Of a stretch of 64,000 bases of DNA, positions 24,199-31,985 are shown in pieces (position 1 is the first letter of the stretch; each line of letters starts with the position of its first letter). Source of the DNA: Rebecca billardiae RCC1528 (lineage: Eukaryota; Protista; Haptophyta); the NCBI GenBank assembly GCA_965240325.2, contig OZ251241.1, forward strand, positions 248,001 to 312,000. The letters are read 5' to 3'. Under the pieces are notes generated by a model, which saw only the letters and a list, made by a program, of their open reading frames with translations, searched no databases and was not told where the DNA came from. The translations under genes and the position numbers were made by a program.

Positions 24199-24365
24199 GC
24201 AGCCTGCTGTGGGCTGCAACATGTTCTACGACGACGAGAAAATCCCAACAAGGAGTGTCTGCATCATATAAGTATGCGCCTGCCGCATCCGCCATCCAGG
24301 CATTGGTCACGTACGCAAGGTCAAGGACACATATATATATATATATATATTATATAATATATATA

Positions 24366-24407
<42 letters not shown>

Positions 24408-24412
24408 ATATA
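24104..24412. repeat. Two (TA)n microsatellite tracts (24104-24196 pure; 24331-24412 imperfect)
   Basis: Direct reading. Confidence 0.97.
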
Positions 24413-24797
24413 TGCGCTGGCAGCTACTGAGTACTGGTGCATGCTGACGATCGATAGGCGCGCGTATAGCAGCTAAATAGCGCAGCGCCGCCAGTGGCAG
24501 TGCCGAGTGCGCGCGCTGCGCTGCACGCACGCATCAATTCGTCGCATCATCGTCGTCGTCGCGATGATGATCATCTGCATCATCATCGTCATCGCGCGTG
24601 ATCGTCAGCGCACGACCGAGTAGCACATGCACGCCGCGTCGAGTAAAACGGCACTGCTGCTGCGGCGGCGGCGGCGGCGCGCTGCCACGCCACTTTGTGG
24701 CCTGCGCCAGCGCGCGCGGCTCGGCATCGACGCCACGGGCGGGTTGCCCGGTTCGCGGTCGTCGGTCGGTTCAGCTTGCAGTCAGCGCCGCGCCTGG

Positions 24798-27700
24798 TCA
24801 TGGAAGGAAGCGCGCGGGCAGCTCCGAGCCGCCGCCGAGCGCCGAGGGGAAGCCCGCGCCCAGCGCACCCGCGGCGTCGTGCACGAGCTCGCACGCGCGC
24901 GCGACGCCGTCGCCGGGGCTCGGCTCGGAGTGCGCGAGCTCGGTGAGCGCGCGCGCCCACTCGGGCCGCGCGCGCGCCCAGCGCTCGTGCGCGTACGCGG
25001 GCTTGATGCAGCGCTCGAGCTGCAGCAAGGAGGCCGCGCAGAGGGCCAGCGCGCACCCGCCGCCGCCGCTCGAAGCCGCCTCGGCGCGCTCGTCGAGCGC
25101 GTCCTCGAGCGCGGTCACCCAGCGCTTCTGCGCCAGCTGCCACGACACCTTGGCCGCCTTCCAGGGCAGGGCCTCGTCCAGCGCGAGCACACAGCCCAGC
25201 GCGGCGCACACGGCGGAGGGGCGGCCGCGCGCGGCGGCGGCGGGCTTGGGCGCGGCCGCCGCGCGCGCGCCCGAGGCCGGCGGGGCGACGGCGGGCGAGA
25301 GCGAGCGCATCGCCCGGCCGGCGCTCGGCGGCGACTTTGGCGTCGAGGCGGGCGGCGCGGCGCGCTTGCTCGGCGGCGTGGGCGTCTTCTCCTCCGAGCG
25401 CGCGCGCTTCGCCTTGGGCGGCGACGCGGGCTTGGGCGCGCGCGCGCGTTTGCTCGCGCGCGCCGCGCGCGAGGCCGCGGGCGCGCTGCGCGGCTTGCGC
25501 GCGGGCTCGAAGTCGGAGGCGCTGCCTCCCTCGTCCTCGCTGCTCGCCTCCGCGCTCGACTCGGAGCCCGCCTCCTCCTCCTCCTCGGACGACTCGTCCT
25601 CCGACTCCGACTCCGACTCGGACTCATCGTCGTCGGAGGAGGAGGCGGCGGCGGCGCGTGCCTTGCGCCGCAGCGGCGGCTTGGCGCCGCCGCCGCCCTT
25701 GGGCGCCGCCACCGCCGGCGCCGCGCCGCCGTGCTCCGCGTTGGCGCCGAGCCGACGGATCTTGCTCGTGTCGCCGCGGCCGAGCGCGCCCCACTCCTCG
25801 ATCGAGCGCGGGTTGACGCGCTCCTTGACCGCGCGCGCCACCGCCCGCTCGCGCAGCTCGTACAGGGAGGTGCCGCCTTGCTCGGCACACCGCCACACCT
25901 CCATCTGGCCCTTGGGCGCGCGCACGCCGTGCGCGTTGCACAGCTGCTGCCCGAGCGTCTGGATCGAGCCGCACGACCTGCCGCGGCGCGCGGCCGACCA
26001 GCGCGCGCGCGCGCGCGAGGCGGGGAGACGGAGGGACGCGGCGCGGCGCGGTGAGCGGCAGCGCCGCACGGCGCGGCGCGCACGGCGCGCGCGGCGCGCG
26101 CGGGCGACACGCGGCGCGCGCGGGCGGCACGCGCGCGCGCGCGCACTCGGCTGGCGGCGCCACGCCCTTGGGCCGGGGTCCGCGCAGCGCGGCGCTGAAG
26201 GACGCGCTGTGCGTGTGGTCCCGAGCGTACACGCCCGGCTCCCACGCCACGCCCAGCTCGTACAGCGTCGTCTCCTTGGCCTGCTTGGGCGTGAGCGCGG
26301 ACGGGCGCGCCAGGCCGCGGGGTCCGACTGCGAGCGCGAGGCAGCCCTTGCCCAGGCGCAGCAGCGGGGGCGCGCTGGCCAGGCAGAAGGCGAAGAGCCC
26401 CTCGGGCTTGACCATGCCCGAGACGCCGCCCTTGGACCACGCCTGCTCCTTCTTCACCTCGCCGCTCTCCACGCGCGCCTTGAACTCCTTGGACTTCTGC
26501 CGCGCCTGCTCGCGCAGCGCGCCCAGGCTGCTCTGGGCCGCCTTGGCGCGCGCGCGCCCGCCCTCGTCCGCGTACTCGTCGATCGCCGCGCCGCGCTCGC
26601 GGCCCAGCGCGGCGCGGAACGCGGCGCGCTGCGCGCCCGTGCCCACGAAGCGGTGCGAGAAGGTGACGCGCAGCTTGTCCGGCACCGAGCGGCCACTCGC
26701 CTTGATGCGCGCGGACGTGCCGCCCACCGCCTCAAGTGTCTGGAACGTGAGGTTGCGCGCGGTCGGCGCCCAGAGGGCGGAGCCCTGGCGGTGCTCGCCC
26801 ACGCGCGGGTGCGCGGTGGTGCTCATGAAGAGCCAGCCGTGCGCGAGGTACTGCCCGGCCACCGCGTCCACCATGCGCACGCCCGCGCCCAGCCCCTGAT
26901 AGTCCGGGAGCAGCACAGTCCGGTGCTCGCGCCACGCCTTCACGCCGCACTTGTACGTGCCGGGGAAGGAGATGGCGCACACGCAGCCCACCGGCCGCGC
27001 GCCCCACGTGACCAGCCACAGGTGCGCGCCCTTCTGGCAGTCGTGGCTCAGGTAGTGGTGCTCGGCGAACAGCCCCCACAGCGCGCCCTTCTCGGCGCCG
27101 CGCGGCGACGCGACCAGCTCGACGGCCGGCGGCTCAAAGCTGAGCGCGGCGCGCGCGGCCGCGCCCTCGTCGGCGTGCAGCGCCGCGAGCGCGCCGTCCG
27201 CGAGGCGCTGCTCAGGCGCGAGCACCGCCAGCTGCCGCGTCAGCGTCGAGAACACCAGCTGCGGCTGCAGCGCCGCCACGAAGTCCTCGTGGCACGACGC
27301 GAGCACGAGGCCGCGCAGCCCGCGCGCGCGCGCGTACACGCCCACCGCGTGCGCGACACGCAGCGCGAGCGTGCGGTCGACGGCGGAGGTGAACTCGTCG
27401 ACCACGCCGCCGTCGCGCAGCTCGCGCGCCAGCGCCGCCTGGAACTGCTCGCCCGCCGAGAGCTGCGCGTACGCCAGCCCCCAGCAGCCCTCGGGCAGCA
27501 GCACGGCTGCGAGCGCGCGCGCGCCGCACGGAGCGCGCGCGCGACGCGCGGCGTGAGCCGGCATCCGCGGGGCGCGCGCGCGCGTGGCGCGCGCGCGCGG
27601 CGGCGGCGGCGGCGCGCACCTCGGAGCCGCTCGGCCGCCTGCTCCGCGCTCTCAAAGTGCTCGCGCACGGCCACGCCCTCGGCCCACGCGCCGGGCGCCG

Positions 27701-28997
27701 CGCCCGCGCCCGCCACTGGCGGCGCGCCCGCGACAGAGGCGGCCGCCGCGTCGGCCGCGCCTTCCCCGCGCCGCGCGAGCAGCGCGCGCAGCACGGTCGT
27801 CTTGCCCGAGCCGGACGGGCCGACAATCACCGCTGCGCGCACGAGCGCGCGAGAGCGCGCGCGCAGCCGGCAGAGAGGGCGGCAGAGAGGGCGGCGCGCG
27901 GGCGGGCGTGAGGGAGCAGCGCGCGCGGCGGCGCGCGCGGCGGCGCGCGCGGCGGCGGCGGCAGCCAGTCGAGCGCACGCGCGCGCACCGATGGGCGGGT
28001 TGGCGTCAAAGTGCTTGGCGGGCAGCGTCGGCGGCGTGAAGCTCGTCGCGCCGTCGAACTCGAAGTCGAAGGCCTCGGAGGCGCGCTCGGTCGCCTCGTC
28101 CATCGCCACGCGCGCCTTGAGCGCGCACCCCGCGCCGCCCGCCGCGGGCTCGGCATCGTGCACGGCCGAGACGCGCAGCGCGTTGGAGGAGAGGAGCGGC
28201 CAGCGCGCGCTCGCCGCGCTCGCCGCCGCCGCCGCGCCGGCCGCCGCCGCCTTCGCCTTGCCGTCCTTCCCCTTCGGCGCCGGCTGCGCGCCGCCCTGCA
28301 GCAGCCGGTGCTCGCCCTCCTCGCCCTCCGCGCGCGCCTCCCACGCGCTCTCGCACGCGACGCTGATCACGGGGCGGCGCGCAGCCGGGTCGGTGGGGTT
28401 GACGTGCAGCCGCAGCTCGGGGAGCACGAGCACGTGGTCCGGGCCGAGCCACGGCACGATGTCCGCGCACGGCGAGCACACGACCACGCGGCGCAGCCCC
28501 AGCTGGCGCACGAACCGACCGGTGGCGGCCGCCATCGCCTTGGCGGCCTCGCGGTTGACCCACGCGGTGAAGTCGTCGATCACGGCGTCTGTGCGCAGCT
28601 GCCGCGCCAGGAGCGCGCGCGCCTGCTCGCCGTTCGAGAGGCAGTGGAACGGGCGGTGCCACGCCGGGATCGAGCCGAGCCCGACCGCCGTCAGCCGGCG
28701 CTGCGCCTCCTCCGCATCGCCGAACTGCGAGACGATCGCCTTGCCCGCGTCCCACTCGACGCGCTCGGGCTCGCCAAAGTGCGCGCGCGCGAACCGCGTC
28801 TTGCCCGAGCCCGTGCCACCGAGCACGAGCAGCACGCCAAAGTCGGCGCCGCGCGCGAGCTCGGCCGGCAGCGGCGGCACGCCGCCCCCCGCGCCCGCGA
28901 GGGGCTTGCCGCCGCGCGAGGCGGGGGAGGGCGCGGTGCGCGGTGCGCGGGCGGTGGAGGCAGGCGTCGGCGCGCGCGGCGACGTCGAGCGCCCCAT
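24798..28997 (-). CDS. Tandem ABC-ATPase + GNAT acetyltransferase fusion with C-terminal RAMA-like and WHIM/WSD-like regions; introns 27833-27988, 27507-27619, 25978-26146 (about 1,253 aa)
   Basis: ABC1: GGTGSGKT/LSNGE/VIDDF. ABC2: GPSGSGKT/LSAGE/VVDEFTSAVDR/LASCHED. GNAT: FAEHHYL...RTVLLPDYQGLGAG...TTAHP. All three introns are GT-AG and the spliced length is a multiple of 3. Confidence 0.8.
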
Positions 28998-29615: not shown

Positions 29616-31694
29616 TCAGGTGATCACCGTGGGCCGGTCGCGCCCGGTGAAGTGCTCGATCTGCGCGAGCTCAGCCGCGGCGGCGAGCACGTCGGCGAGC
29701 GCGTCCTGCGCGTCGCGGTGCAGCGCGTCCGGCCCCGCCTCTGCGTGCTCGTACCGCTCGGCGTACAGCCGCACCGTGGCGCCGACCGAGCCGGTGCCCG
29801 AGAGGCGGAAGACAGCGCGCGCGCCGCCCTCGAACTTGCACACCAGCCCCTGGTTGGCCGAGGTGGTGCCGTCGACCGGGTCCGTGTACGCGAACGACTC
29901 GACCGCGCTCAGGGCCACGCGCCCACCCGCGAGGCTGGCGGGCGGCTGCTCGTCGCCCGCGGCCATCGCGCCGAGCCGCGCCATCATGCGCTTGGCCGCG
30001 TCCGCGTCCACCTCCTCGTAGTCGTGCCGCGAGTAGTAGTTCCGGCCGTACGTGGCCCAGTGCGCGCGCAGCACGTCGCCCACGCCCACGAGCTGCCCCT
30101 CCGGCGTGGCGCCGTTGTGGTGCGCGAGGATGGAGAGCCAGCACAGCACCGCCCACACGCCGTCCTTCTCGCGCACGTGCGACGAGCCGAGCCCGAACGA
30201 CTCCTCGCCGCAGATGAGCGGGTCGTACGCCGTGCCGCCGAGCTCGCGCGAGTCCATCAGGTTGCCGAAGAACTTCCAGCCCGACGGCGTCTCGAAGCAC
30301 GGGATGCCCAGCTGCGCCGCCACGCGGTCGACTGCGCCGCCGGTGGGCATCGAGCGCGCGACCGCGCGCAGCCCGCCCGCCGACGCAAACTGCGGGAGCA
30401 CGTGCGCGTGCGCCGCGACGATCGCGATCGAGTCGGACGGCGTGACGAACGTGCCGCGCCCGAGGATCATGTTGCGGTCGCCGTCGCCGTCGGTCGCCGC
30501 GCCAAAGTCGGGCGTGCGCAGCCCGTCGAGGCCGGGCAGCGGCGCCCCCGTCGTCGAGAGGCCGAGCAGCTTGACGAGCGCGGCCGCGTACGTCAGGTTG
30601 GGGTCCGGGTGTGCGCCGCCAAAGTCGGGGCGCGGGTCGCAGCGGAGCAGGCACTCGTCGGGCACGCCGAGCAGCTCGCCGAGCACGCGCTTCATGTACG
30701 GGCCAGCTGCGGCGGGCAGGAGAGGCGCGCGACGCGGGGCGGGCGCCGCGGGCAGCGCTCAGCAGCCGCGCGCTGCCGCCACAGCGCGCGCGCTCTGAGG
30801 GCGCGCGCGCGGCGGCGCGCGAAAAGACGCACCGGCGCCGTGCATCGCGTCGATGCGCAGGTCAAAGTCAGAGCGCGCGAGCAGCTTGCGCAGCGCGTCA
30901 AAGTCGAAGCACTTGCGCAGCACCTCGACGTACGTCTCCGCGCTGTCGACGACCTCGACCTCGAACGCGCCGCCCGACTGCAGCGCAAAGCGGTGCACGC
31001 CCGGCGCGGAGAGGTCGATGGGCGGGAGGTCGGCCTCGCGGTACGCGTCGATCGTCTTGGTGCGCGCGTACACCTCGTCCGTCACCGCCTCCGTCGCGGG
31101 CCCGCCGCTCGCCATGTTGAACTTGATGCCAAAGTCGTTGTCCGGGCCGCCCGGGTTGTGCGAGGCCGTGAGCACGATGCCGCAGTACGCGCACCCGCCC
31201 TCGCGCTCGCGCAGGAGGGCGGAGACGGCGGGCGTGGCGATCAGGCCGTTCACGCCCACCCATACGCGCGCAACGCCGTTCGCCGCGGCGAGGCGCATGA
31301 TCGCCTGCGCCGCCTCAGGCCCGTAGTAGCGGCCGTCGCCGCCGACCACGATCGTCGAGCCGCGCAGCTCGTCCGCAGGGAGCACGTCGAAGAAGGACTG
31401 GACGAGGTTGGCGACGTAGTGCGGCTGCATGAAGACCGACGTGCGCTTGCGCACGCCCGACGTGCCCGGCTTCTGCCCCTCGATCGGCGACGTCGGCACG
31501 GTGCGCTCGGCGACGGTGTCGGCCGCCGCCGCCGCCATCGACGCGCCGCCGCGCAGCGCGCGCGGGAGCGGGCCGAGCGGGCGGCGCGCGCCGAGCGCGA
31601 CGGAGACAACCGAGCTCGTGGGCAGCGCGCGCACGGCGGCGCTCGCCGCCGCCGCCGTCGTCGCCGCGAGCAGGAGGCGCACGGCCGCGCGCAT
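29616..31694 (-). CDS. PGM: Phosphoglucomutase with N-terminal signal/transit extension; intron 30707-30832
   Basis: GQKPGTSG, TASHNPGG (phospho-Ser), DGDGDRN (metal loop), CGEESFG, C-terminal PTVIT*. Confidence 0.95.
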
Positions 31695-31985
31695 CGCGCC
31701 GCGCTTGCTGCTTGCCGCCGCTGATGACGCGTGTGGACTGATGACGCGCGTCCGAGCAACAAGGGCACAAGGCTGCCGGGCAGAAATCAAATTGCCGATT
31801 TGGCGGGGACGAAATCCCTCCAATCCGACGAAGCACGGGCTGTGCATTTTTTTTCTGCTCGGACTTGGTCACTTGGACCAGCAAAAGGCGCCAAGTCCAC
31901 TTTCTCCCAGCAGCGCGGCCGCCGCGCTCTGCTCGGTGGACGGCGTCTCCGGCCGCGCGCTTGCGTGGCGCGGCGGCAGCGGCGG

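What the first reader, a model, noticed from the sequence alone, without database searches (positions are those of the whole stretch)
24870..26415. Putative RAMA-like reader and WHIM3/WSD-like domain in the C-terminal part of the ABC-GNAT protein
Seen: LLRLGKGCLALAV...SCGSIQTLGQQLC...VWR....GTSLYELRERA, and LDEALPWKAAKVSW...KRWVTAL...LLQLERCIKPAYAHERW. Known: RAMA domains (MPND-type LLEPG.GVLSI...G..L..) are proposed modified-DNA readers. The E.ALP...W...R.W...LE..IK..Y...W pattern is typical of WHIM3/WSD modules in ISWI partners such as BAZ/RLT/MBD9. Inference: these domains could couple the enzyme to nucleosomes. The RAMA call is tentative.
Basis: inference. Interest (0 to 1): 0.75.

Follow-up and report, generated by a model that had tools for sequence, protein, structure and literature searches.

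The report
RAMA-like DNA-binding tail on algal enzyme
The tail of this alga's phage-derived ATPase-acetyltransferase carries a divergent copy of a known DNA-binding fold (RAMA) and a new helical domain shared with several of its chromatin enzymes, so the enzyme probably works on chromatin; the proposed WHIM3/WSD identity is not supported.

Summary

RAMA call: supported.
- The post-GNAT module is conserved in two other eukaryotic proteins, P0012 and P0023.
- RAMA is the only Pfam hit of P0023's module, and it is below threshold (E 0.062).
- A profile-profile comparison with 13 bona fide RAMA domains gives P 2.4e-4, in register.
- In the window a 268-nt intron splits the domain. No RNA data were available.

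WHIM3/WSD call: not supported.
- There is no Pfam WSD, DDT or WHIM1 match here, although four canonical WSD loci elsewhere in the genome score 57-74 bits.
- Comparison with those proteins' WHIM3-like stretches gives 0.7% probability.
- No Ioc3 or WHIM structure appears in the fold searches.

The C-terminal stretch is instead a real, autonomous five-helix domain. It has at least six paralogs in this genome. They sit on a Strawberry-notch helicase, a pre-SET/SET methyltransferase and a probable bromodomain protein, and possibly on a WSD/CXXC zinc-finger protein. No relatives were found outside the genome.

The parts
27620..28997 (-). Exon 1 of the gene model: ATG at 28997, first ABC unit (P-loop GGTGSGKT, signature LSNGEQ) and the P-loop of the second unit (GPSGSGKT). 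Context for the tail.
   Evidence: Pfam ABC_tran E 1.7e-7.
27507..27619 (-). Intron 1 (GTGCGC...CGCAG), 113 nt.
   Evidence: the frame change and the alignment to P0012 across the junction.
26246..27506 (-). Exon 2: rest of the second ABC unit (LSAGEQ, VVDEFTS), the GNAT domain, a basic linker, the conserved motif and the first half of the RAMA-like domain.
   Evidence: Acetyltransf_1 E 1.2e-4; phrog_11143 E 2.1e-47.
26407..26442 (-). Conserved linear motif AWSKGGVSGMVK just before the RAMA-like domain. It is shared with P0012 and P0023 (AFSKGxVxGPNK) and is predicted disordered in the model.
26246..26406 (-). RAMA-like domain, N-terminal half: first helix and beta strands. Contains LLRLGKGCLALAV.
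25978..26245 (-). Intron 2 (donor GTGGGA at 26245, acceptor CAG ending at 25978), 268 nt, phase 2. An alternative donor lies 15 nt downstream at 26230.
   Evidence: The spliced length of the domain is within one residue of P0023 and P0012. No RNA evidence.
25821..25977 (-). RAMA-like domain, C-terminal half. SCGSIQTLGQQLC stands in the place of the RAMA SPS helix. MEVWR stands in the place of NGWxFW. TSLYELRERA stands in the place of LxxLR.
   Evidence: E 1.9e-7; E 8e-16.
25746..25817 (-). Conserved post-RAMA helix VNPRSIEEW...KIRRLG, shared with P0023 and with the second exon of P0012's gene.
25506..25643 (-). Acidic Ser/Asp/Glu tract of 46 aa directly after the RAMA-like module. P0023 has a similar tract. 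It is analogous to acidic region 2 of MPND.
   Evidence: PMC9963953.
25398..25451 (-). Basic patch KRARAPKPASPPKAKRAR, read as a bipartite-type nuclear localisation signal (inference from sequence only).
24801..25220 (-). C-terminal five-helix domain; helices span 25217-24840. Contains LDEALPWKAAKVSW, KRWVTAL and LLQLERCIKPAYAHERW. It belongs to a family within this genome and is not WSD or WHIM.
24798..24800 (-). Stop codon.

Best explanation
The last ~460 residues of a single-copy, three-exon gene model of ~1272 aa (ABC, ABC, GNAT) form a chromatin-targeting tail with three parts. (1) A divergent RAMA-fold domain, split by a 268-nt intron. By analogy with the solved RAMA domains of MPND and CcrM it should bind the backbone of double-stranded DNA. 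Whether it senses a modified base is open. (2) An acidic Ser/Asp/Glu tract followed by a basic KRAR...KAKRAR patch. I read these as a histone-contacting or autoinhibitory tract, as in MPND, and a nuclear localisation signal. (3) An autonomous five-helix domain that is not WHIM3/WSD. It belongs to a family that this genome also places on a Strawberry-notch helicase, a pre-SET/SET histone methyltransferase and a probable bromodomain protein, and probably on a WSD/CXXC zinc-finger protein. I infer that it docks these enzymes on a common chromatin partner or mark. Together the tail would bring the ATP-driven, phage-type (phrog_11143) acetyltransferase core to chromatin. Shown here: the sequence features, the homology to P0012 and P0023, the RAMA fold of the homologous module, the paralog family and its domain contexts. 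Inferred: DNA binding, nuclear localisation, the docking role and the substrate.
Against: No RNA run was listed, so the splice that makes the RAMA domain contiguous is a model. The fold evidence comes from the homolog P0023, not from the window's own joined sequence, which was not folded. Pfam RAMA is far below its cut-off (13.7 against 35.2 bits), and the window's exon pieces give no hit. The RAMA signatures SPS and NGWxFW are largely lost, and a small RAMA HMM does not find P0023. hhalign probability is only 43.6%. Only three sequences carry the module. The helical domain has no detected relative outside this genome and no informative structural match, so its role rests on guilt by association. 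The biochemical activity of phrog_11143 is unknown. The MPND structure paper found no preference for 6mA.
Confidence: 0.68

Rival explanations
1. One reading: a RAMA reader plus a WHIM3/WSD module that binds ISWI and couples the enzyme to nucleosome spacing machinery.
For: A roughly 35-residue stretch (RW...L...gap...LLxLExxIK...W) resembles the pattern seen downstream of WSD in the genome's own DDT/WHIM proteins. One WSD-bearing protein (C18) probably carries a diverged copy of the helical domain at its C-terminus: HMM 10.4 bits, E 0.004, against 7.1 bits for the best reversed-sequence control; hhalign P 0.01 and 0.0066 for two collinear exon pieces. The relative P0023 ends in a PTM/DIR17 Tudor, a domain that also sits on the genome's DDT-WHIM1-WSD protein.
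Against: Pfam WSD finds four other loci at 57-74 bits and nothing here. No DDT or WHIM1 is in the gene. hhalign against the own-genome WHIM3-like stretches gives 0.7%. The family HMM does not hit any of the four WSD loci in the genome-wide scan. No Ioc3/WHIM structure appears in Foldseek or among the top 50 of an exhaustive VIA search. WHIM3 is described as one part of a joint DDT-WHIM1-2-3 helical module (PMC8536118), whereas this is an autonomous domain on proteins that lack the other parts. In C18 it lies about 300 residues beyond WSD, past a zinc finger.
Confidence: 0.12
2. The RAMA resemblance is convergence or a modelling artefact. The region would be a lineage-specific alpha/beta linker domain with another role, for example substrate or ATPase regulation.
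For: Sequence-level support is weak: Pfam E 0.062, hhalign probability 43.6%, signature residues lost, a small RAMA HMM blind to it. The alignment behind the model has only five rows.
Confidence: 0.12
3. The C-terminal helical domain is a self-association or heterodimerisation module. For example, it could pair the enzyme with the Strawberry-notch helicase rather than read chromatin.
For: The same domain sits at the N-terminus of the genome's SBNO helicase. In another organism the ABC-GNAT unit is fused directly to a full SBNO helicase (P0015). Helical bundles often pair.
Against: The complex prediction gave no answer (score 0.00). That is not evidence either way. The domain also sits on SET, bromodomain and other proteins, which fits a shared docking site as well as pairing.
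Confidence: 0.2

Closest known systems
RAMA domain (Pfam PF18755) as solved in mouse MPND (7YDT, 7YDW) and Caulobacter CcrM (6PBD, residues 268-357)
   Different: It is far below the Pfam threshold. SPS and NGWxFW are replaced (GDILS or CGSIQT; ECWK or EVWR). It has a conserved upstream AFSKGGVxGPxK motif and a downstream VNPRSIxEW helix. It is fused to a phage-type ABC-GNAT enzyme rather than to a methylase, restriction enzyme or MPN deubiquitinase. No RAMA lies near the prokaryotic ABC-GNAT genes sampled.
WHIM3 motif / WSD (PF15613) of DDT-WHIM proteins (BAZ1A/B, Ioc3, RLT, MBD9)
   Same: All-helical. It shares a short pattern, basic-x-x-W...L...(gap)...LLxLExxI. It is found on chromatin proteins.
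   Different: No DDT, WHIM1 or WHIM2/WSD accompanies it. It is an autonomous ~125-aa five-helix bundle with a characteristic LExxLPWxAxKxxW start. There is no profile or structural match to WHIM. It occurs at the ends of SBNO, SET and bromodomain proteins.
phrog_11143 (phage ABC-ATPase + GNAT protein of unknown function)
   Same: The catalytic core of the window protein matches it at E 2.1e-47. The ~370-aa prokaryotic versions are found in at least 574 loci of sampled genomes.
   Different: The window protein has a duplicated ABC unit and the eukaryote-only tail described here.

Membership tests
RAMA (PF18755) | Match to the Pfam model above the gathering score (35.2 bits) | tested here: not met
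   P0023:255-405 scores 13.7 bits, E 0.062; it is the sole family listed and covers profile positions 21-101 of 107. The window's exon pieces give no hit. The own-genome scan gives no hit.
RAMA (PF18755) | RAMA fold as in MPND 7YDT/7YDW and CcrM 6PBD | tested here: met
RAMA (PF18755) | Profile-profile similarity to bona fide RAMA domains | tested here: inconclusive
   hhalign of A6 against 13 RAMA domains (A10): P 2.4e-4, probability 43.6%, 79 columns in the expected register.
RAMA (PF18755) | Sequence signatures SPS, NGWxFW and LxxLR | tested here: inconclusive
   The Trp and the LxxLR helix are kept (EVWR, LYELRERA). SPS and NG are lost.
RAMA (PF18755) | Binding of double-stranded (modified) DNA | not testable with these tools
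   Needs EMSA or a pull-down.
WHIM3 / WSD (DDT-WHIM module) | Match to Pfam WSD (PF15613) | tested here: not met
   The own-genome scan finds four loci at 57-74 bits on C8, C12, C7 and C18, and none at this locus at E<=10. hmmscan of the tail at E<=10 finds nothing. PF15614 (WHIM3) is not in the library.
WHIM3 / WSD (DDT-WHIM module) | Co-occurrence with DDT, WHIM1 and WHIM2 in one polypeptide | tested here: not met
   None of these is found in the three exon frames at E<=1. The genome's canonical protein on C8 does show DDT, WHIM1 and WSD.
WHIM3 / WSD (DDT-WHIM module) | Profile similarity to the WHIM3 stretches of bona fide WHIM proteins | tested here: not met
   hhalign of A7 against A8 gives probability 0.7%, but A8 is a shallow, poor alignment. 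The family HMM does not hit the four WSD loci genome-wide. A weak collinear hit lies at the far C-terminus of the C18 protein.
WHIM3 / WSD (DDT-WHIM module) | Structural similarity to the Ioc3 WHIM module | tested here: not met
   Foldseek finds no hit at E<=1e-3. The exhaustive VIA search lists only generic helical bundles in its top 50, with no Ioc3.
WHIM3 / WSD (DDT-WHIM module) | Binding to the ISWI SLIDE domain | not testable with these tools
   Needs a pull-down.

The most novel reading that the evidence does not exclude
The ABC-GNAT-RAMA protein is the writer of a eukaryotic DNA or chromatin modification system domesticated from phages. It would work with the Strawberry-notch helicase: the two are fused in another protist, and in this alga they are linked through a new helical docking domain. 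That domain would define a previously undescribed chromatin-targeting module shared by helicase, SET, bromodomain and WSD proteins.
Probability: 0.2. Interest if true: 0.85.

Novelty: new variant of a known kind. Interest (0 to 1): 0.6.

Why it matters
RAMA is one of the few candidate readers of adenine-modified DNA in eukaryotes, and only two members have solved structures. Here a strongly diverged RAMA fold is attached to a phage-type ATP-driven acetyltransferase whose activity is unknown. This points to DNA or chromatin as that enzyme's site of action and gives a concrete handle for assays. The tail also exposes a helical domain, absent from Pfam and the PDB, that links at least four classes of chromatin enzymes in this alga. 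Together with a natural ABC-GNAT-SBNO fusion in another organism, it suggests a functional tie between this enzyme family and Strawberry-notch helicases.

Tried and rejected
- RNA evidence: no RNA run was listed.
- Word search with P0023's module: found only P0023 itself. Word search with the SBNO N-terminal domain: nothing.
- ESM Atlas feature searches of the helical domain and of its SBNO paralog: uninformative. Atlas fold search: TM below 0.5.
- PDB sequence profile searches: no MPND hit for the RAMA-like profile and nothing meaningful for the helical domain.
- A small HMM built from 13 RAMA domains does not detect P0023 or the window pieces.
- No RAMA lies within 4 kb of prokaryotic ABC-GNAT genes in 80 loci.
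- A weak DUF7785 hit on the C14 paralog did not recur.
- NCBIfam has no model for any of the parts.
- Complex prediction, helical domain against the SBNO N-terminal paralog: no answer (score 0.00). This counts neither for nor against binding.
- The first genome-contig scan with P0001 found nothing.
- One reference in the wrong frame was corrected.
- Rejected idea: that the paralog similarity is only Ala/Arg-rich composition of a GC-rich genome. Shuffle z-scores are 6.0 to 14.0.

Full report
**1. What is at the coordinates**

The window is about 70% G+C. It belongs to a 72-Mb, 41-contig assembly that is searched exon by exon. Earlier notes of this scan call the organism a haptophyte; I did not verify that.

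LLRLGKGCLALAV lies in one reading frame (26364-26326). The other five lie in a second frame between 25976 and 24978.

The DNA between the two frames has a GT donor at 26245 and a CAG acceptor ending at 25978. A second intron, 27619-27507, joins the upstream frames.

Exons 28997-27620, 27506-26246 and 25977-24798 add up to 3819 nt with no internal stop, which gives 1272 aa. That script joined the exons only to count frame, stops and index positions. No joined sequence was printed, saved, searched or folded.

No RNA run was listed for the locus, so the gene structure is a model. Homology supports it: the spliced length of the domain agrees with P0023 and P0012 to within one residue.

**2. The enzyme that carries the tail**

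- Pfam finds ABC_tran P-loops and a GNAT domain, and nothing else at E<=1, in the three exon frames.
- The ABC-plus-GNAT unit matches phage family phrog_11143, of unknown function, at E 2.1e-47.
- An exhaustive search of 1.84 billion representatives found 1244 relatives but no close ortholog. The best hit is 43% identical.
- Single-unit versions of ~370 aa occur in at least 574 prokaryotic loci.
- Several longer relatives carry eukaryotic chromatin or nucleic-acid modules: a PTM/DIR17 Tudor (P0014, P0023), SAP (P0043), OB plus SpoU (P0042), and a complete Strawberry-notch helicase (P0015).
- The gene is single-copy in its genome, apart from a distant ABC-only relative on contig C13.

**3. The RAMA-like module**

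After the GNAT, the window protein shares a conserved module with two other eukaryotic sequences. P0012 comes from a genomic contig that has an intron of its own at a different position. P0023 comes from a JGI contig. The module has three parts:

- a linear motif, AFSKGGVxGPxK;
- about 100 residues beginning LLKxGxxAL and ending ECWK...G..L..L+;
- a helix, VNPRSIxEW...KIR.

Pairwise, the window's third-exon head matches P0023 at 37% identity, E 8e-16. The second-exon tail matches P0012 at 44% identity over 57 aa, E 1e-4. P0023's module finds only this locus in the window's genome, E 1.9e-7.

The window's domain is split by an intron, and joined models were not to be searched. I therefore tested the module on P0023.

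- *Pfam.* At E<=10 the only family is RAMA: E 0.062, 13.7 bits, covering profile positions 21-101 of 107.
- *Structure model.* AlphaFold2 without templates, on a five-row alignment, gave pLDDT 78.9 and pTM 0.72.
- *Foldseek against the PDB.* The three MPND RAMA chains rank first (best E 9.5e-4, all probability 1.00, best TM 0.73). CcrM follows at probability 0.60. Everything else is below 0.25.
- *Profile-profile.* I collected 13 bona fide RAMA domains from bacterial genomes. hhalign against the module gives P 2.4e-4, probability 43.6%, over 79 columns. The starting LxxGxL, the Ax(V) strand, the Trp turn and the final LxxLR helix are all in register.

Weak points:

- The Pfam score is far below the cut-off.
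- The SPS and NGWxFW signatures are mostly lost.
- A small RAMA HMM does not see the module.
- Only three sequences carry it.

No RAMA lies near the prokaryotic ABC-GNAT genes sampled, so the fusion looks eukaryotic.

**4. Between the two domains**

A 46-residue Ser/Asp/Glu tract (25643-25506) follows the module, and P0023 has a similar tract. In MPND, acidic regions flank RAMA, weaken DNA binding and strengthen histone binding. A basic patch, KRARAPKPASPPKAKRAR (25451-25398), looks like a bipartite nuclear localisation signal. This is inference from sequence only.

**5. The proposed WHIM3/WSD stretch**

The evidence against membership:

- Pfam's WSD model finds four canonical loci in this genome at 57-74 bits, and nothing here at E<=10.
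- The tail has no Pfam hit at E<=10. The gene has no DDT or WHIM1. PF15614 is not in the library.
- The literature describes WHIM1-3 plus DDT as one joint helical module that binds ISWI SLIDE and linker DNA (PMC8536118).
- hhalign of the tail family against the WHIM3-like stretches downstream of WSD in the genome's own proteins gives 0.7%. That reference alignment is shallow.

The stretch is nevertheless not noise.

- It has paralogs in the same genome. Local-alignment z-scores against shuffles are 14.0, 11.6, 11.3, 7.1 and 6.0.
- The shared pattern is LExxLPWxAxKxxWxxxQ+xW, a variable loop, LLxLExxIK, then W...RPxW and two more helices.
- AlphaFold gives a five-helix bundle with pLDDT 76.9 and pTM 0.71.
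- Foldseek, the Atlas and an exhaustive VIA search return only generic helical bundles. Ioc3 is not among them.
- No Pfam family recurs among the members. No relative was found outside the genome.

The carriers are informative:

- the N-terminus of a Strawberry-notch helicase (AAA_34 E 8.8e-95, Helicase_C_4 E 1.3e-56);
- the N-terminal region of a pre-SET/SET methyltransferase;
- a protein with a probable bromodomain (E 7.5e-4, just under the cut-off);
- three proteins without known domains, on C34, C3 and C5.

A targeted search also gives a weak, collinear two-exon match at the far C-terminus of the C18 protein, which has C2H2, CXXC and WSD domains. The HMM scores 10.4 bits, E 0.004, against 7.1 bits for the best reversed-sequence control. 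hhalign P is 0.01 and 0.0066 for the two pieces. That copy lies about 300 residues beyond WSD, past a zinc finger. I read it as one more chromatin protein carrying the domain, not as that protein's WHIM3. This cannot be settled here.

**6. How it most likely works**

*Shown:* a phage-type ABC-GNAT core; a RAMA-fold module (in the homolog); an acidic tract and a basic patch; a helical domain shared with chromatin enzymes.

*Inferred:* the RAMA-like domain binds the backbone of dsDNA, as MPND and CcrM do. The basic patch imports the protein into the nucleus. The acidic tract modulates DNA or histone contact. The helical domain docks the protein on a partner or mark that it shares with the SBNO, SET and bromodomain proteins.

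The natural fusion of ABC-GNAT to SBNO in P0015, and the shared domain in this alga, suggest that the enzyme and the helicase act together. A complex prediction for the two helical domains gave no answer.

**7. Verdict**

- Observation: confirmed.
- RAMA: supported.
- WHIM3/WSD and ISWI binding: not supported.
- Chromatin coupling in general: plausible, from domain associations only.

The finding is a new variant of a known kind, a diverged RAMA in a new architecture. It comes with a helical domain that looks undescribed.

Noticed in passing
P0015 (2734 aa): An ABC-GNAT unit is fused directly to a complete Strawberry-notch helicase (AAA_34, Helicase_C_4, SBNO alpha/beta domain). This natural fusion hints at a functional link between the two enzyme families.
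   Followed up: partly
G000:C1:2762550-2766060 (L013:2050-5562, minus): The genome's Strawberry-notch homolog carries the same five-helix domain at its N-terminus as the window protein carries at its C-terminus.
   Followed up: yes
G000:C23 (L023), G000:C14 (L026), G000:C34 (L014/L025), G000:C3 (L024), G000:C5 (L027): Further members of the helical-domain family sit on a pre-SET/SET methyltransferase, a probable bromodomain protein and three proteins without Pfam domains. In the C5 copy the domain is split between two reading frames, probably by an intron.
   Followed up: partly
G000:C13:200718-201263 (L123:527-7861, plus): A 2445-aa open frame has a region 40% identical to the ABC half of the window protein. 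Pfam finds only a P-loop. This may be a second, very different relative of the family.
   Followed up: partly
G000:C8:2428242-2428598 and G000:C12:425335-425691 (L001, L002): Two WSD loci on different contigs are nearly identical at the protein level. This is either a recent segmental duplication or uncollapsed haplotypes.
   Followed up: no
G000:C8 (L126:2810-6679, plus): The genome's DDT-WHIM1-WSD protein also carries a PTM/DIR17-type Tudor. The same Tudor ends the ABC-GNAT relatives P0014 and P0023.
   Followed up: partly
window 26407-26442 (minus): The motif AWSKGGVSGMVK is strongly conserved in all three module-bearing proteins, yet it is predicted disordered. It may be a functional linear motif.
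   Followed up: no
window 29619-31868 (minus): The neighbouring upstream gene reads as a phosphoglucomutase-type enzyme (TASHNPGGPDNDFGIK), with at least one short intron and a possible transit peptide.
   Followed up: no
window 24353-24533: An A+T-rich simple repeat (it translates as YIYIYIYI) lies just 3' of the gene's stop codon, in an otherwise ~70% G+C region.
   Followed up: no
L028-L107: Single-unit ABC-GNAT genes (phrog_11143 type) are common in Planctomycetota, Nonomuraea and many metagenome-assembled genomes: at least 574 loci. Their function is unknown.
   Followed up: no
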